Below, piece after piece: positions 16,869 through 57,278 of a stretch of DNA of 64,000 nt. The position numbers were made by a program, and so were the translations under genes. Within the stretch, counting starts at the first letter, position 1. Each line of letters opens with the position of its first letter. The DNA is from Trichosphaerium sp. ATCC 40318 (Eukaryota > Protista > Tubulinea), in the NCBI GenBank assembly GCA_038496445.1, contig JALMLS010000322.1, positions 806,001 through 870,000 of the forward strand, written 5' to 3'. The notes under the pieces were generated by a model. That model had not been told where the DNA came from. It did not search any database and saw only the letters and a list, made by a program, of their open reading frames with translations.

Positions 16869-19800
16869 TTAATATTGCTGTGTCTGCAGTTGTTGTGTCA
16901 AATAGCCACTGCCTTGCGTCTGCGTATTGAGATCACCATATCCGTCATCTTGTGACTTAAAATCCTGACTCTCAAGGTTCTGGCTTCTAAAAGACATATC
17001 ATCCATACCACTATCTTGAGATAAAGTAAAGCGGTCATCATAAGACTGAGATCCAGCTAATGATCCTGCTTGTGTTATAGGCATCTGAGACATTGTTTGA
17101 GATTGGGTTTGGAGTTGAGAGGCTTGTGTAGAAGCCTAAGAAAACGAATAAGCACAAAACAAATGAAGAACAAAAAGAAATTGTACAAAGCTTAAGATCA
17201 TACCTGCGAATATTGGGACTCTACATTGCGTCTTTGAGAACGGTAGGACATACGACCAGGTCCTCTAGGGTTATATCCTTCTGGTCCTTGTCTAGAGTAA
17301 GGTCCTTGTGATGAACCCACATAACGATGAGAAGTTGGGGCAGGCATATGTCTGTGACCACGGTTTTGGAAACTTGGTGCTCCTCCTGGTCCAGTAGAAG
17401 AACCAGTTGGCTGGTAACGGTTATACTGTTGTTGTCTTCCATAAGGATCATTGTAGTTATTCGGAGCACCATATCCTCTATCTCTACCTCTATGTCCACC
17501 TTGCTAAAGGAGATGCTTAGATAACAAAGAGAAAAACAAAAAACAGTTTTTCTTTGGATAGTGAGAATACGTACTCTCTCGTGTAATGGGAAACGTCCAG
17601 GAGCTAGAGAGGAATAACCATTGAAGTTATATCTTGCTCTAGGTTTAGGGAATGCAACCATAGATTGTTTAAGATTATTCAATGGACCTTCAACCAAACA
17701 GACATTCTCTTTAAAATAAACAAGAAGATTGTGCCATAAAGGTTGCTGTAGAAAAAGTAAGCCAACAGAAACCAATAATCAACAAAAACAAAAATTGAAC
17801 AAAAATAAAGTTATGTGGACCAACAATACTCAAAAAAAGCAAGTCTTGAAAGAAATACCTTTGAGAGAACTTTTGGATTTCCCAAAATAACTAGGCCGTA
17901 TTTTGCTCTTGTGAGTGCAACATTGAGACGTCTTGGATCATTTAAGAAACCAATACCTACGGTTTGGGTTAGTGGAAGATTTTGTGAAGAATTTTTTTGA
18001 CTTTTTTTTTTGTATTTTCTGGGTTGTGCTGTACTGGCTGGAACACTTTCTGCGTAATTACCCAGAAACTACTCCAGCGAGCGTTATTCAACGAAAGAGC
18101 GACGATAAACCGTCTAAAATTAATGATGAAAATTTTTGTTGGTCGGGATTCGAACCACTGCCGAATTCAAAAAGTCGCCTCCAAATCCCGTTGTGCCATA
18201 GTTGAAATTATTTGAGAAAAATTGCAGTTGGTCAGCGAGCCGTTAAAAAGAAACAATCTTGAGGAAAGCTTACCTTGATGTTCATTCGAACGAACACAAG
18301 AAAGGATTATAAAATCCTTTTCACGACCTTGGAAGCTGTCAACACTCGCCACTTCGATCTCTTCATATAATTCTGTTCGAAGAGAACCAGCACGACGCAT
18401 ATAACTCATAGTGAAAGCGCGTTGTCCTAAAAAGGCGTCAAACATGACCAAAAGTCGAAATAAAGAAACAAAAACAACAATCTACAAAAACTTACCTTCA
18501 TATGGTGTAATGACGCCTATTTGATCAGATCTTACACCTGCCTTGAGGAATTGTGTGACTATCTTCTCGCACATGTTAGCTTCGTCACGATTGAGGTACG
18601 ATGTTCCAGAAGAAGATATCTCCTCTTGTCCCTGACAGTTATAAAAGAACATAGGTTTGTCCGGTGATGGCCATGGGAACTTGATATTCTTTAGCAGACG
18701 TTCTCCAATGGAAACACCGTTTTGGAGTACGCCATCGTAGAATGAATTAGATGGCCATGAACTCAAGCAAGGGTGCATACGATATTGGACCTAAAACAGT
18801 GCGCGTAAATACAACATCATTCTAAAAAAGAGAAAAAAAAAAGGCAACAAGATAGATGACTAAAACAATACCTTTAGCCGAATAGGCTTAATACCAAGCA
18901 TTACTAGACGTTCGAAAAGTGACTGGCAAAGACCTGAACGAGCAGCTTTCTTGCACATGATAACTGGACCGAGCTGACAATGATCTCTAATAAAAATATG
19001 AGCAAAGCACGAAGACACGATTCTCCTACTTACCCAACAAATACGCATTGTTGAGCGCCAAGTACAAGAGGAATAATGCACTCTGGTTCAGTAGCCTGTG
19101 TAGACTCATCAATAAGCACACGCTTGAATCTGAAATGCGATAATCGCGGATCACCAGCACCAACGCAAGTACAGCAAATAACTTGCGCGTTTGCTAAAAT
19201 CTCACGTTCAGCAGCACGTTTCAAGATCTTATAGCTCTTTTCATCTTGGCTTGATAACTCTCCTTGTTGATCCTTAAGTTGTTGTAGTTTGCGTAGTTCC
19301 ATCTTATCAGGTGTTTCTAGACGCTTCACTTGGTAGTGAAGAGTCAAAAAGTCTACTGGAGACGATACAGCCTCTCGGCTTTTAGCGCATAGACGAACTA
19401 CGCGTAAACCTGTCGCATGAATCTTTTCTGTCAATTGATCCACAGCTACGTTAGATGGTGCAGCAACCAACATACGAGATTTGCTTCCCTTAACAAGATA
19501 GTATACAATAGCAGCAGACGTTACAGTTTTTCCTAACTTAAGTTAGGTTTTATAAAGCCTTAACCCATGATCATTGTACCTGTTCCAGGTGGTCCTTGAA
19601 TGAGGTTCAAAGCTGAGTTTAATACAGACTTTACAGCATCAACCTATTAACATGAGTCAGTAATTAACTATTAAAAGTATGAACGTACTTGAGATTCATT
19701 GAGTTCTGGAAGACCTGGTGGAGCAATTTCTTGTGGAACTTTTATGCGTAGTGGTTTATGTTCTACTTCATGACCGAGTAAACGGTGATACAAAAATGAA

Positions 19801-21701
19801 GATACAGCGCTTTCTAAATACACCCAATAAGACGCCATATCACTCGCACATTTACGTACCATCAACAGCAAAGCCTTTCATTGCATTTTGCATACCTAAA
19901 CAATAAATTTAAGAACCAATACAACAAGCAATAACTCCAAGAACACGTACGATCAAACGATGTAGATTTCCAAACAAAATCTACCATATAACCAATAGTA
20001 ACATCATGAGGAACAGAGGCATTACTACGAAGCTCTAAAGCAACTTCCTCATCTACAATAAAGTGTTACAAACTAATCTAGATCAAAGAACAAAAAAACT
20101 TACTGCTTAGTTTGATAACATGCCCAACGCAGCTCCAAGCATCTCTTGTAGCGCTTCCAACATATCTCAAACGTAATTCATCACCGGGTACCAAACGCAG
20201 TTCAGCATCATTTCTAGGGAATTGGAACCATGCTACACGCTTCTTATTAAGACCCATTGACCACCTGACTGTTACATCTCGCTGTGTTTGGCTTTCTTTC
20301 ATTTTTTTGTCATAATCAGCCTCAAGCTTTACAAGTGGACCGAAGATATTTTGATACTGGTATGCGTCTTCATAACTAAACAGAATAAGAACTCATTAAG
20401 AACAGCATTGAGCGCCAACAACAATTTTTTTGATCAAGAAAAAAATGAAAGAAAAAAGAAAAAAAATGTTGATTCTAATACATACATTGGGAGAACTGGA
20501 AGTGGAGCGTCATCAACCCCAGGTTTATCAATATCTTCCAAGTTAGCATCAGGATTTGACTTCCATAATTCTTCTAGCTTATTAATTTGTTGTGGTGTTA
20601 TTTGCCTTGCACGCAATTGTTCTTGCTCAGATGGTACTTTAACAAGCCAAGGTAAAAATGAACGATCCTTTGAAAAAAACCGTAAGCACTATGACTCTAT
20701 AGTAGAGCAAGCAAACATACCTGAATTAGTGGCTGCCATTGTGATAACTCCCAATCCATATTTTGCAAATCGCTACTAGTAGCACAAGGCTCACTAATTG
20801 TAATAAATACTTTGTCATTGTGTTGTTTAAAAAGTTACTAATTTTCAAGAAACAAGAAAATTCATACCGGCATAGAAGAACGACTAGTGACTCGCTCTTG
20901 GCAGGTACAAATCCAAGAACAAATGTGTTCCTACAACCGCACAAGTAGCACTCCAATACAGTCTCACCAAGTGGCGAATCACGATGTAAACAAACCTATT
21001 GTTTTATCAATAAATCTCTAAAACCAAGAATATCCTTACCTCTTTGTGCTTAGATCGGACGAGATGCTGAATTATGTGGGAGCTGTAGTGAGTTAGATCA
21101 CATACATTGAGGGTGACAAGTTGTTTTTTGACGCGTGGAGCGCAGTAGAGCTGAGGGAAACGTACCCGGATGTTCCACCCCTACCATTACAAAACCAGTT
21201 GCCTGTGGCGATACAACGCACTACACACGAAGGGTTGTGAAGGCCACAGTATCTAGTTGTGAGCGTTAACATTTAAATTAATTAATAAAAGGTTACAGGC
21301 GAAATTACACCTGACAGTGCTGTTTCTATAACGTACGTGCAACTTTCGGCAGGTATTTCTTGTACAGCTACCTCTTCCTCTTCAAAATTGTCTTGGAAGT
21401 GTAAATCTGATGTTGCTGATACTAATTCAGCCAAGGAAGTGTCGCTAACAGCTGAAGGTTGCGATGACCCTTCTTGGTTTTCATTGTTCCAAACAGCAGA
21501 TAGAGTGTTCTGGGACGCTGCTTGAGAGTTGTCGGTAAATTCGTGCTCATTATAAGCACCGTATTCTGAATCTTGTGTGTTGAACTCTAAAAACGAGAAA
21601 TCTTGGCTTCCCTCACGAAAATAATCCTCTGTGTGAGACGTTTCTGTTGTTTTTGTACTGTCTTGCGACAAGCCAGGACCGTATTGGTCTCTTGGTTCCA
21701 T
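16869..21701 (-). CDS. UPF1: Regulator of nonsense transcripts 1 (UPF1 RNA helicase), multi-exon
   Basis: CH domain ([20 protein letters not shown]), LIQGPPGT|[66 protein letters not shown]-rich tail. Confidence 0.97.
17957..18273 (-). mobile_element. 317-nt UPF1 intron carrying a tRNA-headed (SINE-like) repeat, copy A
   Basis: A box TGGCACAACGG (18198-18188), B box GGTTCGAATCC (18156-18146), hairpin 18037-18078, A-rich tail; 57-nt ungapped core 44/57 identical to 56777-56833. Confidence 0.65.
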
Positions 21702-21909
21702 GGTACGCGTACAGTGGCGTTTTATCAAGATTTAAGCCTTTTAAAAATTCACTCGCAGCGAATTCCCCAAGACCAATCATTCTCTCAAAACAATCAACTC
21801 GCATCTAAAACATTACGCATGGTGTTAATGAGTAATGAATAACATTACGAAACACATAATAAACAATTAGTAATTACCGCCGCATAATTACGCCGAGCAA
21901 TTCGCTACA
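21702..21909. promoter_or_regulatory. Short bidirectional promoter/UTR region between divergent UPF1 and RNB genes
   Basis: Predicted start codons at 21701 (-) and 21910 (+) are about 208 bp apart; TAATTAC-(C)GCCG occurs twice at about 21871-21895. Confidence 0.55.
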
Positions 21910-24900
21910 ATGAGGAGAAGTGTATTACACCCTGTAGGAAAGAATAGGGGTTACACGCCAAACAGAAGGCGAAATCATGGTAAGCAAGCAGTGTATCACT
22001 AGCTAACAAAGCACACTTACGCGTAACAGGTAAAAACCCTGTACCTTCACCGAGGAAGGCTCCACAAACTCAACCACACATGCCAATTGGAGACATTAGA
22101 AGTATTGGAAGTATACCTAAAGTAAAACCTGTCCCAGAGCAATTGCCTTATCAAAACCTTCCACAGCTCCCTAATTTTGTGCCAAACGGACCAGAGGTAT
22201 GTAGTATTCAACACTGCCAATCTACTCGCATACAATTACCTGTTTTCTTTGCGAACCCAAAATTGCTCGTTCTGGAGTCCAGTAAAAAACAATCCAAAGC
22301 GACGCGTTGATAGACGTTCGTAACACACAAAAAATATTTTACAAAAAACTAACGCGAACGCTTTTTCGTTGGGCGTGTACGCACGAAAGAACTAAGAGCG
22401 AAACTAAGCGCATTAATTCGTTTTTTTTTGTTTGATCAAAAAGTAAAATCTTTTTTTTGAAAGCTTCTAATACCCTTCAGATAAATGCGGCAGCGTATCA
22501 GAGTATAACACCATTCTCTGGTGGCGTTCCTAAGCTTTCTGGACCAGTAATAAATGTTGCACCTGTCTACTCACCACAACATTTACACCTCCAGAATGTC
22601 CGGCCCCATCCTCAAATTCCGTACCACAACCCGCAACAGCAGTTTTTCCAAGCTCACCAACAACACTACCAAAATATGAATTTGCGTCACCCCAACATGT
22701 CCAATTTGATGCATTATCAGCAAGCAGTGTTCAATGCACCAAGGAGACCTGTTCCAGCGTATAATCAACGCGTTTTTGTCCCTCAACACGCTGCTAGATT
22801 TAATCACCAACCAAGCAAAAGCGCTTATCAGCGCACGAATATTGGCCATAGATTAGATGTTCCGTACGTGTCATGAACTTTTTGTATTAATTCTCTACTC
22901 GCAAAGTAAAAAAACTAACTCTCTTAGAACGCGTTCGAACTCTGCAAGAAGGTATATCCCTGGTGACGTACAAGTAGCGAATTTTGATAACGCTGCTCTG
23001 GCACGACGACCAGTTGTAATTGAGTTTATTAACGATGACTGTCGTTGTCTTGGTTTACTCAGTACGTTATAATTTACAGCTCCACTAATTCTGCCGCGTT
23101 TCCATTAATTTTCCTCTTTGCATTATTTTTTAAATCTTCTAACAATCTATCCAGTTGAGCGTGTTGGTGATGATTCAAGGCATAAAAACACTTATTGGGT
23201 AATCACGAACAAGTCTCAGCCTGCAATAGCAGTAGAGGTTTCCCAGATAACGTTTCAATGGCCTTCTCGGCATCACTTTACAAATTACTTTTTCCAAGCA
23301 CAAGATATTCCAAACCTTCAAATTATGTGTCTGGAGCTCACTGAAAAGTACAAAGCACGTGTCCCTATTGCCTGGGGTGCATTTATCGACAAATCCGTCC
23401 ACTATGTGTCCACAGGCGATTTGGCTCAGTTTCTCTTCAAAGAACAACCAGACTCTCCAAAACCTCACGAATATTACGTAGCTCATCGTTTAATGTCAAA
23501 TGACTGTGTTTACTTTGAAGAAACATCCAGACGTCATGTATTCCGTTGCCGAACATTAAAAGAAGTATCAGAGCGTAGACGAATGGAATTGAGCAATAAT
23601 TCAGACTCTACAATTATTTTCTTGCATCGCGTAGTGGCTTGGTTGAAAAAACGTAGTTACAACATGTCAGGTGCAAAGCTTCCTTCCTTGCCAAAAATTG
23701 GAGACATAGACTTGAAATGGGATGTTGTTGCTGATAAGTCTTTCATTGATGAGATAAGCTCATACGCGCTTGTACCTCCTGGACATCAACCAAACTCGAA
23801 GATTTACTCTAAATACCTAAAGGTAAGACACAAAAGGGCTTTGCTTGAAAGTTCTTTATCTTTGTTCATTCAACCCTTTACTCATCATTATTTGTAGTAT
23901 TTGGGTGTTGGCGATATGCCTAGAGGAGCATTCGATTTGTTAGTACGTTTGGGCGTGTACAGTAAGCACCAAAACGTCAATCTGCTTCGTTACCCTCACA
24001 AACTCGACTTTACTCCACAACAAAACAAAAAATACGCTGACCTCTCGGCAATACTCGATAGACCAATAGACTTTATAGAAGATCACAGACGTACGTGTTT
24101 TCCTCATTACACAGACTTCATATTGACATGATTTCACTTCTAGAAGTCTCACGAGGACCACTTGTTGTAGATAGAGATTTTGAGGTTCGTAGGGATCTCA
24201 CACATGTCACACCTGTCCTTGCTATTGATGAAGATATAAATGGAAACGAAATCGATGATGCTATCGCCCTCCATACGAAGAACGGCAAAGAATGGGTTAT
24301 TATTCACATTGCCGACCCTACAAGAGCTATTACACCAAATACTGAGCTTGATCTTTTGGCCAGACAGCGTGCTTGCTCTACTTTCTTGCCAGAGGCTAGT
24401 TTCTCAATGTTTCCTCTTCCACTTGCGCGTAACAATTTCTCGCTACGTCAAGGAAAAACAAATTATTCCTTGTCTTATGCTGTGACTTTGGCTGAAGATG
24501 GATCGATAGATGACTACGAGATATGTCCTGCAGTTGTTGGAGCAGTAACAGCCCTCAGCTACAATGATGCAGATGGTATGCTTAATGGCGTTAAAACGTC
24601 CAAAAAGACGAGGCAGTCAGTTACAGATAGTCTTACAAGGTTGCGTGAGCTTGCTGATTTGAGAAAAGCCTACAGAGTCCGGTACGTCTACGCGTTTTTA
24701 GACTTTTCGCCCAACTTTGGGTTGGCCGCACTTTATTGTTTGTGCACCACTAACATATCCTTTAGCAAAGGTGCAGTTGTGCTTGATATGCCATCACCTC
24801 AAATTCGTGTTGCAGACGAAGATGAACCTCAAATAGACCTTGTAGTTCGTTATGACTATGATTCTCCTTCAAGATCTACTGTACAAGAGCTTATGATTAT

Positions 24901-25759
24901 GGTTGGTGAAGTATCAGCATTATTTGCAAAGAAACATAGTATCCCTATACCTTACAGAACAGTGAGTTTACTTCCCTTTTTTCTCAGTTTACAAGTAAGT
25001 TTGCTGAGTTTATTTTCTAGGTTGACCATACTCGATCCAAGTCAGATGCTTCTGATACAAAAGTGACCGCGCCTAACCCATTATTGGCTGGTTATGATAA
25101 GTTTATGAAGCTTGTTGAGCAAATTAAAAAAATGGGTCAGCTTCCACAAGCTGTGAATGAAATCAATCCTGGGAAGCACTCTGCATTAGCTTTAGATCAG
25201 TACTGTCATGCAACATCTCCTATTCGCCGTTATAGCGATTTATTGGTACATCACCAGATCAAAGCTGTTCTACGTGGAGATAAGCCTCCGTTTGATAAGA
25301 CGAAAGTAGTTTCTATAATGGTAAGTCCAAGAAACAACTGTTTTGGTGTTTTGAGCATCGCGTAGTGGTTGCTGCTTTACTCACTCTTTTGATAGGAAAG
25401 ATTGGCTGAGACTAGTTCTAGTCTATCGCGTCTTACACAGTACAGTCAACGTTACTGGATGCTAAAATATCTTGAGCAAAAAGAGGATGTAGCTCAATCA
25501 GTTTGGAAGTCTCTTGTTCTTTCTGTTAGCAAGAAGTTCTCATTTGGTGGTGCTCAGCTACAAGTAATGCTATTGGATCTAGCTTTTAGAACTACGACAT
25601 TTTTACCTAGAGTCCCTGAACAAGGTAACGACTTTTTTTCTTCAAAAGGTTGTTTTTTTTTTGATACTTACTTGTTTTTCTTCTCTAGGTGACGTTCTGT
25701 TCTTGAAAATTGGAGAAATAGATGCCTTTAATAATGTATTACGCTTTGAGGAAGTATAA
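21910..25759 (+). CDS. RNase II/RNB-family 3'-5' exoribonuclease (Dss1/RNR1-like active site) with Q/H/N-rich N-terminal extension, multi-exon
   Basis: AIDEDINGNEIDDAIAL, IHIADPT, VQELMIMVGE, IPIPYR, HATSPIRRYSDLLVHHQIK, QRYWMLKYL. Confidence 0.9.
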
Positions 25760-26598: not shown

Positions 26599-27735
26599 TT
26601 ATGCTGTAATTTTACTATAGTAGTAACTTGGTATAATTGTGTGTACACCAATCAATGATCTTATACCCGCCTCTGTTATTGCTCTACATCCATCCAAGAT
26701 GATAGTATGCACACCAACCAGAGCTTTCAGCCCTTTGTCTGTTATAGCTGTACATGCTAATTTAATTGTATGTACACCTACCAATGCTTTCAAACCTTCA
26801 TCTGTGACTCTTGTGGATGATAAATCAATCTCATGCACACCTGCCAACGCTTTTATGCCTCTATCTGTTATTGAATCACAAGCGTACAAATTGATAGTGT
26901 GTACACCAATCAGAGCTTTCAGCCCTTTGTCTGTTATAGCTGTACATGCTAATTTAATTGTATGTACACCTGTCAAAGCTATTAACCCTTCATCTGTCAC
27001 GTTTGTGTATCCTAAATTAATTGTGTGTACTCCTGCCAATGCCGCTATGCCTCTAGCTGTTACTCTATTATTTTTAAGTGAGATTGTATGGACACCAGAT
27101 AATGCCAATAAACCTTCATCTGTTACATTTGTTTGTGATAAATCAATCTTATGGACACCAGCCAATGCTCTTATGCCTTCATCTGTTACTTTATTCTGTG
27201 AAAGGTTGATAGTATGAACACCTGCCAATGCTTTGAGACCTTCATCTGTTACTTTCGTATGTTCAAGGTCGATAGTATGAACACCTGCCAATGCTTTGAG
27301 ACCTTCATCTGTTATTTGGAGGCATGCGTATATGCTGATAGTATGGACACCTGCTAGACATTTGATTCCAGCATCTGTTACATTACTACAATAGGAAAGA
27401 CTGATTTTGTGTACTCCTGAAAGCAGAGGTAAGATGTCATCAGATACTTCTTCGGCAATTCCCGTCAAAGAAATATGCGTGTTCTGAAGTAAAGGGCTTC
27501 CAGAAAGTAGGTACAGCTCACTTTTGCTTAAAACAAAAATAATATTGTATCCAACGTGCTTGTGGACAATATCTCGCAGCAAGCGACATGTTTGAGCTGA
27601 TCTCAGAGTAAATGTGCTGCATTTCAGAATGAGAACAATAATTTCAACTGGAAGAGAGATAAGGTCGATTGTATGCGGTTGGAGAGATCCGATGTCCTTT
27701 GGCTGTTTAGTAGATTGGTTTGTTCTTTCTTCCAT
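26599..27735 (-). CDS. Intronless F-box-like + LRR protein, paralog 2
   Basis: LISLPVEIIVLIL; about 12 LAGVHTIxL repeats; internal near-duplicated repeat blocks. Confidence 0.87.
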   Translation of the reverse strand: MEERTNQSTKQPKDIGSLQPHTIDLISLPVEIIVLILKCSTFTLRSAQTCRLLRDIVHKHVGYNIIFVLSKSELYLLSGSPLLQNTHISLTGIAEEVSDDILPLLSGVHKISLSYCSNVTDAGIKCLAGVHTISIYACLQITDEGLKALAGVHTIDLEHTKVTDEGLKALAGVHTINLSQNKVTDEGIRALAGVHKIDLSQTNVTDEGLLALSGVHTISLKNNRVTARGIAALAGVHTINLGYTNVTDEGLIALTGVHTIKLACTAITDKGLKALIGVHTINLYACDSITDRGIKALAGVHEIDLSSTRVTDEGLKALVGVHTIKLACTAITDKGLKALVGVHTIILDGCRAITEAGIRSLIGVHTIIPSYYYSKITA

Positions 27736-46018: not shown

Positions 46019-46755
46019 AAACCCCTTGCTAAAGATTTACAAACCGCAAAATGTACACGTGATCTTAAAGAAAGAAACGTGCAATAAAAGTATTACGCCA
46101 AAATAGTTGTACATTTAACTTTAGTTCAGTTCACTCATCATGTTGTTATATTGGCTTGTGAAAGATCTAGTACATTAAACTGTCTAGAAGCTATTTTAGA
46201 AATTACTAATAGTGAACAGATTGACGCTACAATTGAAATCAAAATGAAATCCACTTGAACATCAATAACGACACACCCAGCAATTCCACTAGACGGACAA
46301 CTAGCACATTATTTAGGTTCACATATAGTGGACCCACTGCCGTTGTGAGACAACGAAGAACTTCTCACTTAAGGGCTTGCTCTAACTGCTACATTAAAAA
46401 CCTTGTGCAACCGTACTGGAAGCCTAGTCACTACTGTTTATTGTTTTGGCTGGGGTACATAACGTTCCTATATCTCTTTTTTTCCTGATGAAGCATGTTT
46501 AGCGAAAAAGAAGGTAACAAGTATTTCTGTTACGAATTTTTTTTACCTGTCAAACTCTGATCATGCGATCAAAATTTCGTTCTGCTGATACTCCTATTTT
46601 AACTGTTTCGTCTCAATTACGGCAATACCTCATCAAGCTACAAAAACTATCGTTGTACTACACTCTCACATGATGCAGTATAATCGAAAATCAATGCTAC
46701 CACGACAAGTCCGCAGCAACAGTTTGTATGTCAGTAATCTCAGAAATTGCCACAA

Positions 46756-48786
46756 CTATTTGTGGCTAAACTTTTCATGCTAAGCACATGATATCAAACA
46801 TCACGTCATTACAGTACTTGGTATTACTTTAGTTTATTGATTTGTAATCATAGGCATGAGTCTGTATACGGTAGCAATACCACATAAGGACCACACAAAC
46901 TAGTAAGATATTAGAAAAAAAAAACTACAATAGCAACTTACGTATGATCAGTACAGCTACACCTACACCAACAAAAATGAAAGGGCTAATAAGTTTTTGG
47001 CAAAAGGTGTTATCATGTGATCCATATGCTTGAGCTGCTTGATGTCCATCAGGACAATTTATACAATTGGAAAGCCCTACTTTATCACTATAGGTGTTAC
47101 CTACACTTGCTTCACATGTACCAACCGAAGTACTAATTCATATTACAACAGCAACCTTGAATATTATACATACCCGCCCGTACCAATCACACATGGTTCA
47201 CATTCGAAAGAATTTAAATACTCACCACGTGGACAATATGAGCACAATGTTTGGTTCTCAGGATTTTGATGCTTGTTTTTAGGACAAACAAAACAAACAA
47301 CAGAGCCAAACTTGTAGAATTGTGTTGAACAATTTACTAGGAGAAATCATTAGAGCTTGTGTGCTTGGTGAGGGAAAAAAATACCTTGGCATTCGGCACT
47401 GTTTTGTCTAAGGACTGGTTTGTGTACAGTGTCAGAAAAAAAGATAGCTCCAAAACTACTCCTCACCTAAGAGTGTTAAAAGAACTGCTAAGAGACTCTT
47501 GTTCAAGAAAAAAACTGTACCGGACACCCAAACTGGTTATCAGCTACAAGCACATTTGAAGATTCTGAAACAGGAGTCTGTGTTTCAACAGCAAAATAAG
47601 CGTTTGCTCCATTGAATGTGTTGTTTGTGACTTCGAGTGTGAGTGCAACTGAAGGAGAATAAAAAGAGATACAAACAGGATTGGGCTTGTCTTTTGAATC
47701 AAAGTCACAACCATATACAGCGTTCCTTACAAATTCTATGTTGTTACTCACAACACGTATAGAACGGTCATATAGGCCGGTGAGATCAAACGAGCTATCC
47801 ACAAAGCTTACAAAACTACCTTTAGTTTTTTTAGCTAAAGTGAACAATGAACAGTTTGGCTGACCTCTAAATACATGTTCTGCATATGGTTGGTTTGCAA
47901 AAGAGCAATTATCCAGTTGTATTGCAATGACGGACGAATTGTCAGCAACAATGTTTAAAGAGCGTTGTATATCAGTCCTACATAAGGTTACACTGCCAAT
48001 GTTCTCTGCACTACCCGGTGACAAATTTATTTCTAGTTTAGATGTCAAACACGTGGTATGTTGTATGTAGTATTAACGTACCACGAACAGATGTAAGTAT
48101 TGTATTATCAATTGTTAGATTGATTGTAGAATTATCCTCTTTAAACTTGAAGTACCATTCAGGATCTGTTAGTCCGTCAATAGTAAATCCAAACCCTTTA
48201 TCAAACTCAAACTAATACAGGATTAGAACTGTGACTGATCACGCATGAAAAGCATACCATCACTTTAACTCCGGTTGCTGCCGTCATGTTTTTCCATGGC
48301 TGGTATGATATTACTCTTTTACCATTGGCTGTTTTATACTCAGCGATGCTTTCTGTTTGGCTATACTCACCACCTTTAAACGACAATAAGAACACATAGT
48401 CAATTCTACTAAAAACATATGCTGTCTACGTGCAACATATCAAACTATCTGTATTTGGCATGGGACACATGTACAAACAGTAACACAAAAATAAAGTACA
48501 TACCATCCAGGCATATTGCTCTCTTAACATTTTCAACTGTATTTTCAAGAGCTTGAGATACTGTCCTTAATGTAGAAGTCCTGTTTAAACCAGACTAACA
48601 ATATGTTATTAAAAGCCTACTATAGTACACTCTGTCTTTTGCAGTTGGGCAAAGTGTAATTGGATTTTGTTTAAAGTTTCACTTACACTGCTATCATTAC
48701 CCCAAGGTGCTACAAACACATCGCAAGCTGCTTATGGTATTATTATGACAAATATTGTAATTTTACATACCAATGGCTTGCTTCAT
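46756..48786 (-). CDS. Type I membrane protein: right-handed beta-helix/pectin-lyase-like ectodomain, CxxCPxG repeats, TM helix; 3' end uncertain
   Basis: VFVAPWGNDS ... LRTVSQAL start motif; Asn-rich beta strands (NNTF, NNIEF); CSYCPRG and CINCPDG; TM FIFVGVGVAVLI|xLVCVVLMWY. Confidence 0.6.
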
Positions 48787-49436
48787 TGCACTTGATTGTG
48801 ATACTGTGTTATGTGATTGCGCACCTACTATACATGCTATCGATACTACTACCAGCGTAATCATAAAATAGAAATGTTGCTGCATGACGCTGTATTCCCA
48901 GAAACTAATAAAAGTGCAAAGAACCCACGTAAATTCAACGCAAAATTTGAGAAAGTCGGAAATACTCTTTCACCGCTTTTTTGCTCTTCAATGTTTGGGA
49001 TTTAAATTAAATTTTGTATTGTTGTTGTCTACGCTACAAGTTGGCATCAGGTTTGAGTCAAACGGGTGTTGTTTTCCTTTTTGAAATGTGATTTCTTTGA
49101 ATTACACAAACAAGTCGACCTCCAGTTTTGCTTTCGAAAAGAAACAAATTTCTGGATAACAAATGGGACCCTGCCACTCCGCGCTTCAATATTCTAACTT
49201 CTAAGTCTTGTTACTATACTGTTGGTAAAACAAGTCTTATTGAACTTGCACTTGTCTACCATAATTAACCAATCGCGATGGCAGATGCAAGTTGGTATCA
49301 ATAAATAAATATAGCATACAAGTGCCCACCGATTTAATCAATACAAATATCATAGAAGCTAGAAGCTAGAAGACACTACTGAGTCGTAAACCAAGGCCAT
49401 TTATTCTGTCGTTTTTACTAGTACAACCCAACTGTA

Positions 49437-49748
49437 TTACATTCCGCCTTGAGGTGTAAGCCCAGGATTGCCGCCTCCACCATGCACCCTAAAATACTTT
49501 ACACGCTCTGCTACAGAATTCAAACGACGATAAAGAATCAGTTTGTAGTCTAAGTTGTCTATTTGATCAATTGAGTGTAGGCATTCATATCTAGTCTTAT
49601 AAATATCTCTCCATAGTCTATTACAATCCAAGAAATGCTTCATACAAACATTGGTAGCCACCAATTTGCTTAATATAACCCACGGATGTTCTGGTGCTAA
49701 AAGGATTATATACCGTACTATTTCAAGAGGTAGATCGTTAACTGACAT
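49437..49748 (-). CDS. F-box protein (first exon; further 3' exons possible)
   Basis: MSVNDLPLEIVRYII ... NRLWRDIY ... DYKLILY, typical of an F-box plus the following helix. Confidence 0.65.
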   Translation of the reverse strand: MSVNDLPLEIVRYIILLAPEHPWVILSKLVATNVCMKHFLDCNRLWRDIYKTRYECLHSIDQIDNLDYKLILYRRLNSVAERVKYFRVHGGGGNPGLTPQGGM

Positions 49749-50376
49749 GAAAACACTGTTAAATAAAAAAAACTGTAGTGAGACTTTCTTCAAAATAAGC
49801 CGAATTTTATGAGAAAGAGAAGAGAAGCTGCGTGGACCTATGTATTATTTCCTGTGCTCTATTACCATTACTCAAATTATAGTATAACGTTACAGTACTG
49901 AGTGTGAGGTTACGGACAGGTAACGAACAAACTATAGAAAGCACTTCAAGACATGTACATAGCCTGGCACGGCGAACAATGTTCAAACTTAAATAGCTAA
50001 ATTATGTGCTGTGGTCAATTGTACCTAAATTCCGGAGAGCAAGAAAATGATACATTGGTTCTGTAAGGACTTGTTATAGTTGGACAATAAGTAACGGCGA
50101 CGAAGTTGATAAGGTGTAATTATGGAAAAGTTGCGAAAACGACCCTATGTTCTTTGAGTGCACCCAAAAAAAACGTTTGAATGCAATTAAACTTGTTATT
50201 TGTTTTGAGGTAAATAAACTCTTTTTGGTGTTTGTTTATTTCTTTCTTTTATACAATTACTACAGTTACCACTAATGCACACCACCATGTATTATTTTTT
50301 GTTAACTTTGGCACCGGCTTAAAATCAAGGTCTTGGTTCAAAAATATACTATCCAGGTAGTGGCTTTTTTTTGTTT

Positions 50377-52235
50377 TTATAAAAAGTAGTCTGGTGTTGG
50401 TCGCTTTGCAGGTACACCACGTGCTTCCTAAAAACAACAATTAATACAAGTATGTGGCAATCAAAAGACGGATAAAAAAGCTCAGTTGAGTTGATTGAAG
50501 ATGAGAAGTGCAAGACGAAATAAAAAGGAAAATGATTTTTTTACAAGCGAAAAAAAAAAAAATTCAAGCACGTACTGCAGGGGCGGCAGAAAAAATCTTA
50601 AAGTCTTGTTTCAAGTTTTCATTGAGTTCTAAAATTGCTGCTACATTGGCACACCTAATAATCACATCAGATAAAAAGATACAAACAGAGAAATTAAGTC
50701 CTCAGAGATCGAAACAACAAAAAAAACTTTTTTTTTGTTTTTTCTTCTAATACTTCAGCAATTTAATTAGATTCTTCGATTTGGAAAGATATCAGCACAT
50801 TAACTCTGACGGCTCTTCCACAAACATCATTGTATTGGAAAATGTGAAAAGGAAAAAAGATCCAAAGAAAAAAAAAAAGAAAACTAGCTTACCTGTAACA
50901 GTAGTTTGGTGCTGACCAAACAGTAACAAGTGTTTCGTTGAACATATACTTATATCCTTCCATAACCAATTGATGAGCACGTGCAATCAAATTAAGACTA
51001 AAGAAAGAAATAAGCAAAAGACGTAAGAAAAAACAACGTAAGAACTTTTTGTTGCAAAGTCTCGCTCGCTTGGAGAAGCAAAGTTCATACCTATTAGTAG
51101 TGTTCCATTTCTGGACTACATCATCACCAAACAAGTAGCCGGCACCACGAGGAGATAAACCCCAACCTAATTAAACGATGAATAAGGGTTAAAAAAAGTG
51201 AAACAAAAAATGACGTTCACGAAGCGACAATGAAATACCACATGACACAAACGACGTACCATCAATATCCTCAGGATCAGACCACATTAAATCACACATA
51301 GGACCATCATGCGGTACTTCTTGTTTCCTATCAATAGCACGAATCTAAAACGAAACGTCAGGCTGGCTTTCAAACAATGAAGAGGAATAAAGTAGAACTG
51401 TAAATACTCAGCGATAAAATACGTACTTGATCAAGCGTACTAATTGAAGGACTAAGACCACCATGTACACAAAATATACGGTCTTCAATTATAGCTGAAA
51501 GAGACAAGTAATCGAATATTTCTGTGCAATAACGCCAAACATTAACAGATCCATATTTACGTAGACATTCATCATAAAACCCGTATACTTGAGTAATTTG
51601 TCGACTTTCATGATTTCCACGTATCAAAGTAATTCTATCTGGGTAACGCACCTATGTAATAGTGTTATACATTGTACAGGGTCTTTGATGACTTGGATTA
51701 CCAGAAGACGGAATTTAAAAAAAGCATTCTGTTTTTCGCTGTAAAAATGGAAAGGTTTCGTAGGTGTGGTTTGGAATTTCAGAGTAAACGCGTTTTGATG
51801 AGAATTTTAAAAACAGGTTTCAAGTGTACGCAACACCTATGAACATCATTTTTTGCTTTTTTACGCCTGTATAACCTCGTTTTATGTACCTTGAGTGCCA
51901 ATAGCAATAAAAATGTCTCTACACTGTAAAATCCACGGTCTACAAAATCGCCCATGAATAAATAATTAGTGTCTGGGCATTCGCCCCCAATTTTAAATAG
52001 CTCTTTAAGATCGTAGAACTGGCCGTGTATGTCACCGCATATCTTTAAAGTACGTCAATTATACATACCAATACTCAATAAGTTGTACCGTGACAGGTGG
52101 GTCGACTCTCTGCACATTACTTTCCTCCACCAAAATCTCTCTAGCTTTAGCGCAAAGCTCTTGAACTTCCCTCTCCTTTATTATTTCGCATCTTTTTAAC
52201 TGCTCTATCTGCCTGTCGAGGTCAGAAGTGGACAT
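50377..52235 (-). CDS. PPP4C: Ser/Thr protein phosphatase 4 catalytic subunit, multi-exon
   Basis: [66 protein letters not shown]-terminal DYFL*. Confidence 0.95.
50749..50836 (-). ncRNA. Intronic box C/D snoRNA, U49/SNORD49-like
   Basis: Terminal stem AATAC/GTATT; box C ATGATG; guide GGAAGAGCCG-T before D' CAGA; C'-like TGCTGA; box D CTGA. The guide is complementary to the conserved LSU rRNA sequence CGGCUCUUCC. Confidence 0.85.
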
Positions 52236-52552
52236 GGCGCTAATGTATTATTTTTATGATCAAAATGGCTTAATTGCGACAAATTTTTGTTCTGGAATAC
52301 ACAACGAAAAGCGCCATGTGTCATGGAATACATTTACACCATTGAATGCTCAATAACAGATAATGCAACAAATTTTTGCGCTTTTTTTTGCGCCTAAATG
52401 ACTTTTGCTGCTGTATAAAGCAGAAACTACGCGTGAATAGCCAATTACGAGTGTTTTAGCGGTACATACACTATTTGTCATTTGGATATTGTTTATGAAC
52501 GCAAACGCAACTTCGCCATCAAAATGCCTTTATTTTAGTGTGTACAAAGTTT

Positions 52553-52925
52553 TTAGATCTCCTTACGCGTCAAACCTACACAATTGTTAAATTATTATCG
52601 CAATTGAATTTTTTTGCTTGTTCGTTTGAATTAGCGCTACGTACCAGGAGGAAGCGATTGTTTAAGCTTATCAACTTTGCTTGGCTCATCAACAACCAAA
52701 GTGTACAAGTAGCGGCTGCATCTTACTTTAAACTTTGTGGTGTTGGTTTTTTTGTTTGTTTTGATGATAACGGCTATCGTGGGCGTCAGGGCGTATATTA
52801 GAGAGCTTCAAAAGCCGTACCAGTGGCATCTTTTCTCCTTGCTGTTAAAAGAAACTGTTTTACCTGATTAATTTGCTTTGGCTAGGACTAGTGAGCGAAT
52901 TGGGGACAAGAGGATGTCGTACCAT
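52553..52925 (-). CDS. RPL38: 60S ribosomal protein L38 (eL38), 4 exons
   Basis: M|[20 protein letters not shown]|AVIIK ... [30 protein letters not shown]|GLTRKEI*; missed by the ORF track. Confidence 0.95.
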
Positions 52926-53259
52926 GATAAAAAGTTTGGAAGAAATACAGAATAATGCGCAATACGTTTAGTCAACTGAAATCCTAACACGTAAAATTCA
53001 AGCCCGTTGTATCTACGGCTTAGCAATGCTATGACGCCCTTTTCGTTCATGTCAATTATCAGGGAGACAGTAATATCGTTTTGAACCGTTAATGATTACT
53101 GCAGAGAACGGTATTAGGCCCATTCGCTTCGCTTTCGCGTGGTGTTATTTAATTCGGCGTTTATATCGAGCTTCCAAGTCGGACCTCGAATTGATAAATA
53201 GCAGCGCGTGTAGCATCTAGTACAAGTAACCAACGCACAAATAGGTGTTTAACAATTTA

Positions 53260-54624
53260 TTAAAATACAATCGTACAAATCAAGACAAAGAAGCAAACCA
53301 ACGCTGCAAACGCGTCGTATAGTAGCGCCGTAACATAAAGTGATCCCATACAACGGCCAGCAGCAAAATGAGAGCGATAACAATGCTTACAATTAGAAAA
53401 TTCAACGTCCTAAAGGTAAGAAAATTAGCGCTGTTTTCAAGCAAACAAGTGTCATTCTACAAGCTCGGCTAGATCGTTTTAAATCTGTTTACGTACATTG
53501 GGTGTGATAAAACGTCGATAACATATCCAACATTTGAGTGTCCCCATTGCTTGTACTTACGCATACGTATCCATTTTGTCATACAAAATTTTACACCACT
53601 TTTGACAGGTAGACTTGCGTGCAAACTCATGTCATCAGTACTCATGTTTGGCTTGTAATCCCAGAATAGTATAGCATCTCCCTTTTATTTAATAGTAAGA
53701 TCTCGTTGCTAATAGCTTATTATTACTTACTGCTGAGGCGTTAACTGTCACTTGTGCTTTTGGAAATGTTGTTTGGCCACCCTAAAAATGATCAATGTTC
53801 TATTCTTGTGGGTGGACTGGCACTTGAAATTACCTCTTCAGGAAGCTTTAAATAAATTAGCGCTGTTGCTATTCGGTTTCCGTATGATCCTAACCATGAC
53901 TTGCCTTTCCTCTAACGTATTTTTAGACAACAAATAACGTAGTTCCATTCACAGTTTGACGTACCTCTGCGAAGTAGTCGTGATGTGATTTGTACTCTTG
54001 TGATTTATCATAGCGCAGCAGGTATAGTGTTTCACCGTTTTCAGGCGGTGTTTGGGACCATGCAGCCAAGCGTGCCTTGTAAAAGATGTCAGTTCCAATA
54101 TCTGTTAAGGTGCAAGATGTACAGTACCTCAATGTCCAAAATGACAGGATCATTTGTCATGTACGATAGAAAAGTACCCTTTGACGTTCTACTTGATGAC
54201 TTGCGATCCTATTACAACGTGTTAAAGGGTTTTTATAGTTGTACTGTAATTGACAGTGATGCTTACTTCACCTTTATCTCCCACGACTTTGGAATCAACC
54301 ACGTATGCGCTTGCTGTCGTTGATTAGATGCCACTGGATTTTGTATTCTTTTTTGTACCAGTGTCTATTATGTGTTGACATGCTTCTGGTGATGCAAATC
54401 CGCGATAAATCTGTACTCTAGGCCTCCAAGACAACGTTTCAATAGGTGTAGGATTTAACGCAGCCAAAGTCGTGCTTTGAGCAGGTTTATGCACTGATAA
54501 CGCCCCTTTGTTGTACTTCAGCGTTTGTAGTTAGTTAACGCGTACCGAGTTTGTAAGTACCCAACAAGGCAAGTACAACTATTGAAACGATGAATACAAT
54601 GGTTTGGGTGCTCCAGTAACGCAT
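53260..54624 (-). CDS. Prolyl 4-hydroxylase (2OG-Fe(II) dioxygenase, plant/algal type), multi-exon
   Basis: N-terminal signal anchor; ETLSWRPR, ENGETLYLLRY ... EYKSHHDYF, NRIATALIYL, GGQTTFP, GDAILFW, SLHASLPVKSGVKFCMTKWIR. Confidence 0.88.
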
Positions 54625-54805
54625 TTTGGTGCATACAACACGTTTACCCTAAAAGGAGCACTCTCTGCTTCAAGGGTTGCCTTCCAAATTATTTTTGATT
54701 GATTTTTCAAGCCGGCTTAGCCACATACACTCAAGTCGCGTTGTTTTATCAGTCTACACGTAGTAGTTTAGTATAACATCTCTCCATCATTGAAGAGTGT
54801 AGAAG

Positions 54806-57278
54806 ATGGAAAAACTGGATAAAATTCTATCTTCTAACTCTGCTCTTCTCCCGAGGCTAATCCGCTTCACTGCAGCACGAGATAAGCGTTCTTATACGCG
54901 TAGCGAGTCATGGTTAAATGGTAAAATATCAGACAATTTTGTAATCATTCGCTTAGAGGAGGTGAGATGCTACCTTTGAATTGTGTACAACTTATACTCG
55001 TTTGCAGGAACAAAAACCACAAACGCAAGAAAAATCAACAAAAAAGAACAAAACAGCAAAGAAGGACACTGAAGACCCAAGCGCTCCGCCTACAACACCT
55101 CCAGAGTGTCCCGCTTCCCTGACATGGCAAAAGGCAATATCTGTTGGTCCAGGCCTTATAAACCTCGGTAAGAGCTCCCTACATCATAACCGAATACCAT
55201 AAAATCGTACAGCTTGCTGTTGCCTTTCGCCTTTCTAAAACTGGTTTAAACCGTCCAAAATATCTTGTACGTGCTCATGCTAACTTGTTCTAGGCAACAC
55301 GTGCTTCCTAAACGCCGTTTTGCAATGCTTGACCTATTCTCCCGCATTTACGAATACTTTGCTCCAAAGGATTCATTCTCGCTCTTGTACTAGAAAAGGA
55401 TTTTGCATGATGTGTGTACTCGAAGGGCACTTCCAAAAAGCACTTGGGTACGATAAATGGCGGAGGAATCACCTAAAAAGCCGTCGCGATTGACATTTTT
55501 TTATAGCAATAACAAGTATCATAAACACGCCCTGAGGCCTTCCTCAATTGCAGGAAACTTAAAAGCTATCGGGAAACAGTTTAAGATATACAGACAAGAA
55601 GATTCGCATGAGTTTTTGAGGTGTTTAGTTGATGCTCTGAGCGGAAAGAAGATGAAGAATCAATATAAACCAGATCTTAATTCTTTGGCTTTCAAATGCT
55701 TTGGTGGTCATTTATGTAGTCGTGTATCATGCTCTAGTTGTAAGCGTGATTCTAATACATATGATCCCGTAATGGACATATCTATAGATATTTTGAAATC
55801 GAACACAGTCAACAAGGTACCCAAGAAACTTTCTGTGAACCAAAAGAAAAACTGACAGTTTTTTTTTTAAACGGTTCTTTCTCTTTAACTCATTTGTTTA
55901 AGGCTCTGCAACAGTTTTTTGGAAAAGATGTTTTAGAGAGAGATAACTCATACAAATGTGAAGGATGTAAGAAGAAAGTGAGGGCTGTTAAGCAGTTCTT
56001 TTTGCACCAACACCCAAATCTGTTGACGATTCAGCTCAAGAGATTTGACTTTATGGGTAAAAAGCTATCTAAAAAGGTAGCATATCCGCCAGTACTAGAT
56101 CTTAAAAGGTTCCTTACTGATAAATCTAAATCAGTGCGTAGCCGTCTCTCATCTACGTGTTGATTTTTTGACTTAAACAAAACTTAGGCACTCTACAAAC
56201 TTCACGCTGTATTGGTTCATGATGGGTATACATCACGATCTGGTCATTATTATGCTTATATAAAGGCGCCTAATCAAACTTGGTACTTGATGGATGATTC
56301 CACTGTACGTGCGGTAGGAAAGCAAGAGGCTATGAGGCAACAAGCTTACTTACTGTTTTACTCCCGAGTGTCTGATGTACGTCTACTTACTTGCGTCAAG
56401 TCTTAATATTTGCTAGGGAGAGCATGTACCTGCACCACAGCCCGATACAGACATGCCAGAAGCGCATGTAGAAACCGAGCAACCACAAGCTAGATCTGGA
56501 TTTCAGTTTAAGAAACGCCAAAAAACAGGGTTTATCAATAGAAAGATGAACAATGGCGCACATGTAGATGAACTTTTATCGAAGACACAACACATGAAAG
56601 GTACGCTAGAGCTCAAAAGATTTTTCTTTTGAGTGGGTCAACTTTTACGCCTTTTTTATTAACAAGAAACATTTTGTATCCGAGTGGGAAATGTCCCATG
56701 TCTTCGATTTTACTATCATCAGTTCAAGCCCTTCATTTTCCAAAAAAATTTTCAACAAAAAAACTTTCCTATTCCCTGAATAACACTCGCTGGTATACTT
56801 TCTGAGTAATTTAACAAAAACAATACCAGCCAGCGTACAAGGAACCAAAAATAGTAACACACGTGAAAAATCACAAAAGTCAAAAAAAGTCAATTATTTT
56901 TCTTCACTCACAACCAACATAATACAATGTCGCTAACACTGCTCTAAAGGGTTTGGTGATAAAAAGAAGCAGAGACAAATAAATAAAGTTATTGCAAAAT
57001 CAAACAGAAAAAGAAATCGCGACGAGCTTGACATTGAATATGATAAAGGCAGGCAAAGAAAAATCAAGAAATCAGTACACAACCAATTCGGTTTTCAACG
57101 TAACGGTAATGATTTCGAACGTGCTGCAAGCAGACCAAATTTTGAGCCTGTTCAATATGGAGGCGGTCGCAATGGTCGTGGTCGTGGCGGTCGCGATTTT
57201 GGCGGTGGAGGTCGTAGAAATAACAAACATAAAAACAAACGTGACAGGAAGAAGAGACGCAGATCCTCAAACTGGTAA
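54806..57278 (+). CDS. Ubiquitin carboxyl-terminal hydrolase, USP36/USP42-like (C19), multi-exon
   Basis: GLINLG|NTCFLNAVLQCL, QEDSHEFL, QLKRF, VHDGYTSRSGHYYAYIK, WYLMDDS, AYLLFY; C-terminal DIEYDKGRQRKIK plus RGG/basic tail. Confidence 0.9.
56601..56949 (+). mobile_element. 349-nt USP intron carrying the same tRNA-headed repeat, copy B
   Basis: A-box-like TATCCGAGTGG (56677), B-box-like GTTCAAGCCC (56722), hairpin 56789-56830, tail AAAGTCAAAAAA; homologous to 17957-18273. Confidence 0.6.

What the first reader, a model, noticed from the sequence alone, without database searches (positions are those of the whole stretch)
17957..56949. Two unrelated genes share a homologous long intron with tRNA-like head, covarying hairpin and A-tail: candidate SINE-like introner or new intronic RNA family
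Seen: the UPF1 intron 17957-18273 (317 nt, -) and the USP intron 56601-56949 (349 nt, +) are several times longer than most introns here. Read in host sense, they have the same order of parts: (i) donor-proximal GTA[A/C]GCT..CTCAA(AA)GATT(G)TTTCTTTT; (ii) Pol III A box (TGGCACAACGG / TATCCGAGTGG); (iii) B box (GGTTCGAATCC / GTTCAAGCCC); (iv) AAAAATTTTCA; (v) a 57-nt ungapped core, 44/57 identical (18034-18090 vs 56777-56833), forming a hairpin with compensatory changes (GCTGGAG/TTCCAGC vs GCTGGTA/TACCAGC); (vi) ACA just after the hairpin; (vii) AAAGTCAAAAAA..TTCTTCAC before the branch point. The junctions carry 5-nt repeats (AGGTA; AAAGG). Known: SINEs have tRNA-derived A/B boxes, whereas the best-characterised introners are DNA-transposon-like. 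Inference: similarity reaching both intron ends suggests the element is the intron, i.e. a retro-type intron generator; alternatively it is a structured Pol III or H/ACA-like RNA family.
Basis: partly seen in the sequence, partly recalled or inferred. Interest (0 to 1): 0.85.

Follow-up and report, generated by a model that had tools for sequence, protein, structure and literature searches.

The report
SINE-like repeat inside two long introns
Two unrelated genes each have an unusually long intron because both carry a diverged copy of the same short, tRNA-promoter-bearing mobile-element-like sequence with a hairpin core. That is ordinary biology unless a whole-genome search shows the element itself creates introns.

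Summary
The observation largely holds. RNA contigs skip exactly 317 nt at the UPF1 intron, and its neighbours are 69-113 nt. The USP intron is inferred from reading frame only.

The two introns share:
- a 57-nt core, 44/57 identical (E about 7e-7 in the window), that folds as a hairpin;
- the only two A-box/B-box pairs with tRNA-gene spacing in the window, both in host sense and at the same offsets;
- an A-rich tract after the core.

The 110 nt between head and core are no more alike than background. The last 35-57 nt share only the branch point. The "covarying hairpin" rests on one double change, and 5 of 20 pairs break. No tRNA cloverleaf or Rfam family is found.

Imperfect direct repeats sit just outside the A box and the A-tract (UPF1 19/25, p about 0.008; USP 15/21, p about 0.07). 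Removing that unit leaves introns of about 85 and 105 nt.

Best reading (about 0.5): sense-oriented, diverged copies of a modular SINE-like repeat inserted into ordinary short introns. The introner reading (about 0.12) and a host-selected hairpin RNA (about 0.15) are not excluded.

The genome beyond this window could not be searched, so copy number is unknown. Other first-reader notes report about 575-nt tRNA-headed SINEs elsewhere in this genome. They have not been shown to be the same family.

The parts
17957..18273 (-). UPF1 intron, 317 nt, phase 1 in the Gly codon of ..NEHQ-G|IGFLND..
   Evidence: RNA contigs of X1 and X3 skip exactly this stretch. Sequence with GTAAGC donor, ACTAAC branch point and TAG acceptor is shown.
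56601..56949 (+). USP36-like intron, 349 nt, phase 1 (inferred, not read-tested)
   Evidence: The upstream ORF stops 10 codons into it. The downstream frame continues for 107 codons into a K/RGG-rich C-terminus. It has a GTACGC donor, GCTAAC branch point and AAG acceptor.
18188..18198 (-). A-box-like motif (2 mismatches to TRGCNNAGTGG), intron position 76
18146..18156 (-). Perfect B box GGTTCGAATCC, 42 nt after the A-box start
   Evidence: Only match in the window; expected 0.08.
56677..56687 (+). A-box-like motif (1 mismatch), intron position 77
56721..56731 (+). B-box-like motif (2 mismatches), 44 nt after the A-box start
18127..18142 (-). Shared A-run/T4 block just after the B box
   Evidence: Local alignment 18/19, 34/1000 shuffles.
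56740..56754 (+). Shared A-run/T4 block after the B box
18034..18090 (-). 57-nt core forming a 20-pair hairpin, followed by GTACA
56777..56833 (+). 57-nt core. 15 of the 20 pairs are kept. Followed by GTACA after a 2-nt insertion.
17992..18018 (-). A-rich tract with a GTCAAAAAAA unit (tail-like), ending 35 nt before the 3' splice site
56866..56893 (+). A-rich tract with two GTCAA units (tail-like), ending 56 nt before the 3' splice site
18199..18223 (-). Upstream copy of a TSD-like direct repeat, ending exactly at the A box
   Evidence: 19/25 to the downstream copy; fixed-position null 25/3000.
17970..17993 (-). Downstream copy of the TSD-like direct repeat. It starts at the end of the A-tract and contains the branch point.
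56652..56672 (+). Candidate upstream direct repeat, ending 4 nt before the A box
   Evidence: 15/21; null 219/3000, not significant alone.
56900..56920 (+). Candidate downstream direct repeat, 7 nt after the A-tract
18246..18260 (-). Donor-proximal T-rich block shared with the USP intron (56617-56630)
   Evidence: 14/15 with one gap; 1/1000 shuffles; 0/181 T-rich donor-like 45-mers reach it, but the best of them scores 20 against 23.

Best explanation
Each intron is an ordinary short intron (about 85 nt in UPF1, about 105 nt in the USP gene). Each was lengthened when a roughly 207-225-nt copy of one modular, SINE-like interspersed repeat inserted in host-sense orientation.

The repeat has three modules:
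- a head that keeps only a tRNA-gene-type A box and B box at tRNA spacing;
- a central 57-nt hairpin-forming domain;
- an A-rich tail built on GTCAAAAAAA-like units.

The mosaic similarity (boxes, core and tail alike; everything between at background level) is the pattern seen between SINE families that share a central domain. In those families selection acts on the mobile source copies, not on the inserted ones.

Shown: the splicing of the UPF1 intron, the core homology, the box pairs and their spacing, and the lack of similarity between head and core.

Inferred: retroposition, the element boundaries, insertion into a pre-existing intron, and any Pol III transcription.
For: - Core homology: E 7e-7, 0/1000 shuffles.
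- The only two A+B box pairs with 42-44-nt spacing in 128 kb of both strands fall in these two introns, in sense, with about 0.07 expected for each.
- Same module order and offsets: A box 76/77, B box 118/121, core 184/177, tail ending at 282/293.
- Region 69-183 scores z -0.1 while the core is 77% identical.
- Direct repeats abut the A box and the tail end: UPF1 19/25 with 25/3000 in a fixed-position null, USP 15/21 with 219/3000.
- Repeats within one intron are more alike (59%, 53%) than same-side segments between introns (42%, 39%).
- Subtracting the unit and one repeat copy gives about 85 and 105 nt, against RNA-verified neighbours of 69-113 nt.
- The SINE head/body/tail scheme and shared central domains are established (PMC3531059, PMC4824008, PMC4758252).
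- Unchecked first-reader notes report tRNA-headed SINEs with TSDs elsewhere in this genome.
Against: - Only two copies are known. Copy number and boundaries cannot be checked without the genome.
- The head is not recognisably tRNA-derived beyond the boxes.
- T4-T5 runs lie between the boxes and before the core, and one T4 block is shared by both copies. A Pol III transcript might therefore not reach the core.
- The direct repeats are imperfect, and the USP pair is not significant alone.
- The 5' splice site to A box distance is nearly identical (75 vs 76 nt), and the donor-proximal block is alike (about 0.007-0.01 against window-derived nulls, 0.001 against shuffles). Independent insertion into unrelated introns does not predict either.
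- The UPF1 intron position is absent from 4 of 4 other eukaryote UPF1 loci.
Confidence: 0.5

Rival explanations
1. Introner: the whole intron is the mobile unit. It brings its own 5' splice site, branch point and 3' splice site, and it created both introns on insertion into exons at AG|G sites.
For: - Host-sense orientation in both genes.
- The donor-proximal block is alike: 1/1000 shuffles, 0/181 real T-rich donor-like segments, and the first 68-70 nt at z 3.2.
- Nearly equal distance from the 5' splice site to the A box.
- Both introns have a perfect CTAAC branch point, unlike the four neighbouring introns.
- Both are phase 1 in a Gly codon with 5-nt junction repeats.
- The UPF1 position is unshared with 4 of 4 other loci, whereas two neighbouring positions may be shared.
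- Retroelement-derived introners are documented (PMC12130899).
Against: - Apart from the branch point, the last 35-57 nt are not similar. BLAST-level similarity is the core alone. The boundary criterion of PMC9860276 is therefore not met at the 3' end.
- The A-rich tract is internal, not terminal.
- TSD-like repeats flank an internal unit.
- The junction repeats are largely splice consensus.
- An ordinary neighbouring intron has a similar T-rich donor-proximal motif.
- Whole-intron folding is unremarkable for UPF1, z -1.1.
Confidence: 0.12
2. The hairpin core is a host-functional intronic RNA element kept by selection after the introns diverged. It could be a miRNA-like precursor, a protein-binding hairpin, or a structure that helps splice an over-long intron.
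For: - The core is 77% identical while its flanks are at background similarity.
- The hairpin is stable in both introns, z -3.7 and -3.1.
- The 5' arm is better conserved than the 3' arm.
- One compensatory pair and two G-U/A-U switches.
- Weak generic miRNA-precursor-like Rfam hits, best E 0.014.
Against: - 5 of 20 pairs are lost in USP, and covariation is no better than shuffles.
- No Rfam family reaches threshold.
- No RNA contig covers the intron interior in four runs. This is weak evidence, because contigs drop rare or small RNAs.
- No third copy in the window.
- It does not explain the box pairs or the A-rich tract.
Confidence: 0.15
3. A one-off copying event between the two introns. This could be intron transposition by reverse splicing and recombination, or gene conversion of the core. 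There would be no multi-copy family.
For: Only two copies are seen, 38 kb apart, both in host sense, with some similarity near the 5' end.
Against: A single copying event predicts uniform divergence along the intron, not 77% in the core against background elsewhere. It also leaves the A/B boxes and A-rich tail unexplained. A gene-conversion tract limited to 57 nt between inverted loci is ad hoc.
Confidence: 0.08
4. Remnants of another kind of repeat, such as a small DNA transposon or MITE whose palindromic centre is the hairpin. The box motifs would be incidental.
For: The core is an imperfect palindrome that matches itself on the opposite strand.
Against: No terminal inverted repeats were found at the unit's ends. 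The box pairs with tRNA spacing at matching offsets are very unlikely to be incidental in both copies. The A-rich 3' tract and the long variable direct repeats fit retroposition better.
Confidence: 0.1

Closest known systems
tRNA-derived SINEs with a shared central domain (CORE-, V-, Deu-, Ceph- and Meta-SINE superfamilies; PMC3531059, PMC4824008, PMC4758252)
   Same: Head with internal A and B boxes at tRNA spacing, a body with one well-conserved central segment while the rest differs, an A-rich degenerate-repeat tail, a size of about 210-225 nt, and candidate flanking direct repeats.
   Different: The head shows no detectable tRNA cloverleaf or tRNA-model match. T4-T5 runs lie inside the unit. 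Copy number is unknown. The central domain was not compared with published ones, because no reference sequences were available here. The host appears to be an amoeba-like protist, outside the taxa listed in SINEBase.
Introners / introner-like elements (PMC9860276, PMC12130899)
   Same: Similar introns in non-paralogous genes. They are longer than ordinary introns, lie in host sense, contain a stable hairpin, and have AG|G junctions with short repeats.
   Different: Similarity does not reach the 3' boundary. Only two copies are known, against a minimum family size of four. The copies are highly diverged rather than near-identical. Internal TSD-like repeats point to an element smaller than the intron.
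Intronic snoRNAs (H/ACA or C/D)
   Same: Located in host sense inside an intron, with a hairpin followed by ACA.
   Different: There is no second hairpin or H box at the right place, and the UPF1 hairpin has no internal pocket. There are no sense-strand C and D boxes with a terminal stem. No Rfam match.

Membership tests
SINE (SINEBase definition, PMC3531059) | Short (<1 kb), interspersed, non-tandem repeat | tested here: met
   Two copies of about 207-225 nt, 38 kb apart, in unrelated genes on opposite strands. Only two copies were seen.
SINE (SINEBase definition, PMC3531059) | At least about 100 copies per genome | not testable with these tools
   Only this 64-kb window is readable. All four runs that were laid held spliced RNA contigs, not DNA. 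Metagenome and viral scans were empty.
SINE (SINEBase definition, PMC3531059) | Head at least 60% identical to a tRNA (or 5S/7SL) over at least 60 nt | tested here: inconclusive
   No tRNA set was available for an identity test. Proxies failed: ARAGORN found nothing down to -ps70, and the Rfam tRNA model gave no hit at E<=10.
SINE (SINEBase definition, PMC3531059) | Internal Pol III promoter (A and B boxes at tRNA spacing) | tested here: met
   These are the only two such pairs in the window, with spacing 42 and 44 nt and 0.07 expected for each. The perfect B box is unique in the window. Transcription itself was not tested. SINEBase warns that boxes alone give false positives.
SINE (SINEBase definition, PMC3531059) | 3' tail of simple or A-rich repeats, followed by a target-site duplication | tested here: inconclusive
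   An A-rich tract is present in both copies. Flanking repeats are 19/25 (p about 0.008) and 15/21 (p about 0.07).
Introner (operational definition, PMC9860276) | Intron-intron similarity at BLAST E<=1e-5 between non-paralogous genes, not low complexity | tested here: met
   Core E 7e-7. The hosts are a UPF1 helicase and a USP peptidase.
Introner (operational definition, PMC9860276) | Similarity begins within 5 exonic or 10 intronic bases of both the 5' and the 3' boundary | tested here: not met
   At the 5' end, GTA.GCT plus a block at positions 14-28 is marginal. At the 3' end, the last shared block ends 35-56 nt before the splice site, and after it only CTAAC is shared.
Introner (operational definition, PMC9860276) | Family of at least four introns | not testable with these tools
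   There are two copies in the window. nhmmer and a covariance model with filters off find no third.
H/ACA snoRNA | Two hairpins with internal pockets, an H box between them, and ACA 3 nt from the 3' end | tested here: not met
   The UPF1 hairpin is continuously paired with no pocket. No ANANNA lies directly upstream of the hairpin. No Rfam hit.
tRNA gene | Cloverleaf with acceptor, D, anticodon and T arms | tested here: not met

The most novel reading that the evidence does not exclude
The unit that moves is the whole intron. It would be a tRNA-promoter-bearing, hairpin-centred introner in an amoeba-like protist that supplies its own donor, CTAAC branch point and acceptor, and that created both introns (UPF1 position 158.33 and the USP36 tail). 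The hairpin would be retained because mobility or splicing needs it.
Probability: 0.12. Interest if true: 0.7.

Novelty: new member of a known kind. Interest (0 to 1): 0.3.

Why it matters
If it is what it most likely is, it is an uncatalogued SINE-like family in a poorly sampled protist. That is useful for repeat annotation and explains why some introns there are several times the usual length, but it is not surprising. It would matter more if a genome-wide search showed that copies coincide with intron boundaries. That would add a SINE-type, Pol III-promoter-bearing introner to a list dominated by DNA transposons. The conserved hairpin would then be a concrete handle on how such elements stay spliceable or mobile.

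Tried and rejected
- **Rfam and tRNA searches:** Rfam at gathering scores on the whole window, and at E<=10 on each intron, gave nothing credible. The only hits were generic hairpin matches and antisense C-box-like chance hits at non-homologous positions. ARAGORN at default and relaxed thresholds found no tRNA.
- **Further copies in the window:** blastn with word size 7, nhmmer --max and a covariance model with filters off all found none.
- **Copies elsewhere:** two metagenome scans and one viral scan with core patterns gave one hit, a chance match in a bacterial-looking contig without the hairpin.
- **Sequencing runs:** all runs that were served turned out to hold spliced RNA contigs.
- **Organism identity and close relatives:**
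  - The best UPF1 exon hit is 77% identical.
  - An exact look-up of a window ORF found nothing.
  - A second protein search returned bacterial relatives.
  - Only 'amoeba-like' is suggested.
- **Exon-flank similarity** (ACATCAAG|GTATTGGT vs ACATGAAAG|GGTTTGGT): by hand count 6/11 downstream, and upstream only the AAG consensus. I judged it not significant.
- **Heuristic intron predictor** for a larger null set: far too permissive, and discarded.
- **Whole-intron folding:** UPF1 z -1.1, USP z -2.7. No shared global structure.
- **Earlier findings:** searching by sequence returned nothing.
Full report
**What is there**

The UPF1 gene lies on the minus strand. Contigs from runs X1 and X3 are spliced transcripts that skip exactly 317 nt at 17957-18273. 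On the + strand the skipped ends read CT..AC, with a 5-nt junction ambiguity. The four neighbouring introns that the same contigs skip are 69, 71, 81 and 113 nt. The intron is therefore real and three to four and a half times the local norm. No contig from any of the four runs covers its interior. That is weak evidence against an abundant stable RNA from it.

The upstream reading frame stops ten codons into it. The downstream frame runs for 107 codons through a K- and RGG-rich C-terminus. The gaps between the USP exon ORFs suggest its other introns are only some tens of nt.

**How alike the two introns are**

The 57-nt core (18034-18090 minus strand, 56777-56833 plus strand) is 44/57 identical without gaps. 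blastn gives E 7e-7 against the window, and none of 1000 dinucleotide shuffles reaches its score. Outside the core I tested each region against segments drawn from the window at matched G+C.

| Region of the intron | Result |
|---|---|
| First 68-70 nt | z 3.2 (10/1500) |
| Head to core, positions 69-183 | z -0.1, no similarity |
| After the core | z 3.3-3.6 |

The part after the core owes its score to an A-rich block built on AAAAGTCAAAAAAA.

The donor-proximal block beats 1000 shuffles (1 reaches it) and 181 real T-rich donor-like 45-mers (0 reach it). However, the best of those, an ordinary 69-nt UPF1 intron next door, scores 20 against the observed 23. Part of this signal is therefore the usual T-rich make-up of intron 5' regions here. 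The last 35-57 nt share only the CTAAC branch point. nhmmer and a covariance model with filters off find no third copy in the 64 kb.

**The 'tRNA-like head'**

A scan for an A box and a B box at 33-50-nt spacing finds one pair with a perfect B box, in the UPF1 intron. At the next stringency it finds one pair, in the USP intron. Both are in host sense, and about 0.07 is expected for each in shuffled sequence. GGTTCGANNCC occurs once in the whole window.

| Module | Position in UPF1 intron | Position in USP intron |
|---|---|---|
| A box | 76 | 77 |
| B box | 118 | 121 |
| Core start | 184 | 177 |
| A-tract end | 282 | 293 |

The boxes are therefore real shared features.

Nothing else about the head is tRNA-like. 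ARAGORN finds no cloverleaf down to 70% of its thresholds, and the Rfam tRNA model gives no hit at E<=10. Runs of four or five T lie between the boxes and between the B box and the core, and one such block is shared by both copies. These copies, and perhaps their ancestor, may not give a Pol III transcript that reaches the core.

**The hairpin**

The core folds at -28.1 kcal/mol (z -3.7) in UPF1 and at -16.1 kcal/mol (z -3.1) in USP. Of the 20 UPF1 pairs:
- 12 are invariant;
- one changes on both sides (A-U to U-A);
- two change on one side (G-U to A-U, and U-G to U-A);
- five are broken in USP.

Shuffled partners do as well. 'Covarying' is too strong a word for two sequences. The 5' arm is better conserved than the 3' arm.

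There is no H box directly upstream, and the UPF1 hairpin has no pocket. There are no sense-strand C and D boxes with a terminal stem. No Rfam family reaches its gathering score; the best sub-threshold hit is a generic miRNA-precursor match at E 0.014.

**Where the unit ends**

Immediately upstream of the A box and immediately downstream of the A-tract lie imperfect direct repeats.

| Intron | Repeat coordinates | Identity | Fixed-position null |
|---|---|---|---|
| UPF1 | 18199-18223 vs 17970-17993 | 19/25 | 25/3000 |
| USP | 56652-56672 vs 56900-56920 | 15/21 | 219/3000 |

The two repeats within one intron resemble each other (59%, 53%) more than the same-side segments of the two introns do (42%, 39%). 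That is the signature of target-site duplications rather than of element sequence.

Taken at face value, the unit is about 207 nt in UPF1 and about 220-225 nt in USP. Removing it with one repeat copy leaves introns of about 85 and 105 nt, inside the RNA-verified local range of 69-113 nt. In UPF1 the downstream repeat copy supplies the ACTAAC branch point.

**Intron position**

I spliced the verified UPF1 exons and compared the product with four other eukaryote UPF1 loci fetched through the protein search. All four are contiguous across the long intron's site (aa 158, phase 1). The neighbouring sites at about aa 107 and 191 may each be shared with one locus. This leans towards a lineage-specific intron. 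The nearest relative found is only 77% identical in the helicase core, so it says little.

**Interpretation**

The combination matches the modular SINE plan and the 'shared central domain' pattern of SINE superfamilies (PMC3531059, PMC4824008, PMC4758252). The features are box pair, conserved central segment, A-rich degenerate tail, candidate flanking duplications and a size near 220 nt. In such families, selection on source copies conserves the promoter, central domain and tail while everything else drifts or is swapped. That accounts for the mosaic similarity without any host function. I put this at about 0.5, including the inference that the copies landed in existing short introns.

The introner reading keeps some support, at about 0.12. 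In its favour are sense orientation, donor-proximal similarity, the nearly equal distance from the splice donor to the A box, perfect CTAAC in both introns, and an unshared UPF1 position. Against it:
- it fails the published boundary criterion at the 3' end (PMC9860276);
- its A-tract is internal;
- the flanking repeats point to a smaller unit.

Retroelement-derived introners are in any case already documented (PMC12130899).

A host-selected hairpin RNA gets about 0.15. It would explain the uneven conservation, but not the boxes or the tail. A one-off intron-to-intron copy (0.08) and another kind of repeat (0.1) remain possible. Pure chance is excluded for the core and the boxes.

**Limits**

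The genome outside this window could not be read.
- The runs on offer held only RNA contigs.
- The organism's proteins are not in the protein collection at exon length.
- The metagenome and viral scans were empty.

Copy number, consensus boundaries and orientation bias are the decisive facts, and they are unknown. The host is probably an amoeba-like protist. Its F-box/LRR ORF resembles families from giant viruses, and another first-reader note says the same. That note and three others report about 575-nt tRNA-headed SINEs with TSDs elsewhere in this genome. I could not compare sequences, so they count only as a lead that SINE retroposition operates here.

Noticed in passing
window 9052-9789 (-): An intronless 245-aa ORF of the 2H phosphoesterase / 2'-5' RNA ligase superfamily. 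Its best relatives are Bacteroidota proteins annotated 'mutarotase' or '2'-5' RNA ligase family' at 42-46% identity over about 90% of its length. It is a candidate bacterial gene transfer into this eukaryote.
   Followed up: partly
window 26599-27735 (-) and 13232-14158 (-): F-box/LRR_6 ORFs. Their nearest Atlas clusters by sequence features are from Nucleocytoviricota, and a Chlamydiota LRR family tops the structure matches of the best hit. This is typical of amoeba-associated gene families and a hint to the host's identity.
   Followed up: partly
window 17869-18334 (reads of runs X3, X4): Runs labelled organism C also hold UPF1 transcript contigs only about 80-87% identical to the window. 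A related organism or a diverged allele is present in those samples.
   Followed up: no
window 56952-57272 (+): The last USP36-like exon encodes a K-rich stretch with DELDIEYDKGRQRKIKK, followed by an RGG-rich tail. This looks like a nucleolar-type C-terminus.
   Followed up: no
window 18427-18495 (-): An ordinary 69-nt UPF1 intron carries AGATTGTTGTTTTTGTTTCTTT close to its donor. This resembles the 'shared' donor-proximal block of the two long introns, so T-rich GATTGTT-type sequence may be a general feature of intron 5' regions here.
   Followed up: partly
window 23118-25066 (+): Two adjacent exon ORFs with an RNase II winged-helix domain and an RNB domain, probably a Dis3/Rrp44-like exoribonuclease gene. 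This gives a third RNA-surveillance gene near UPF1.
   Followed up: no
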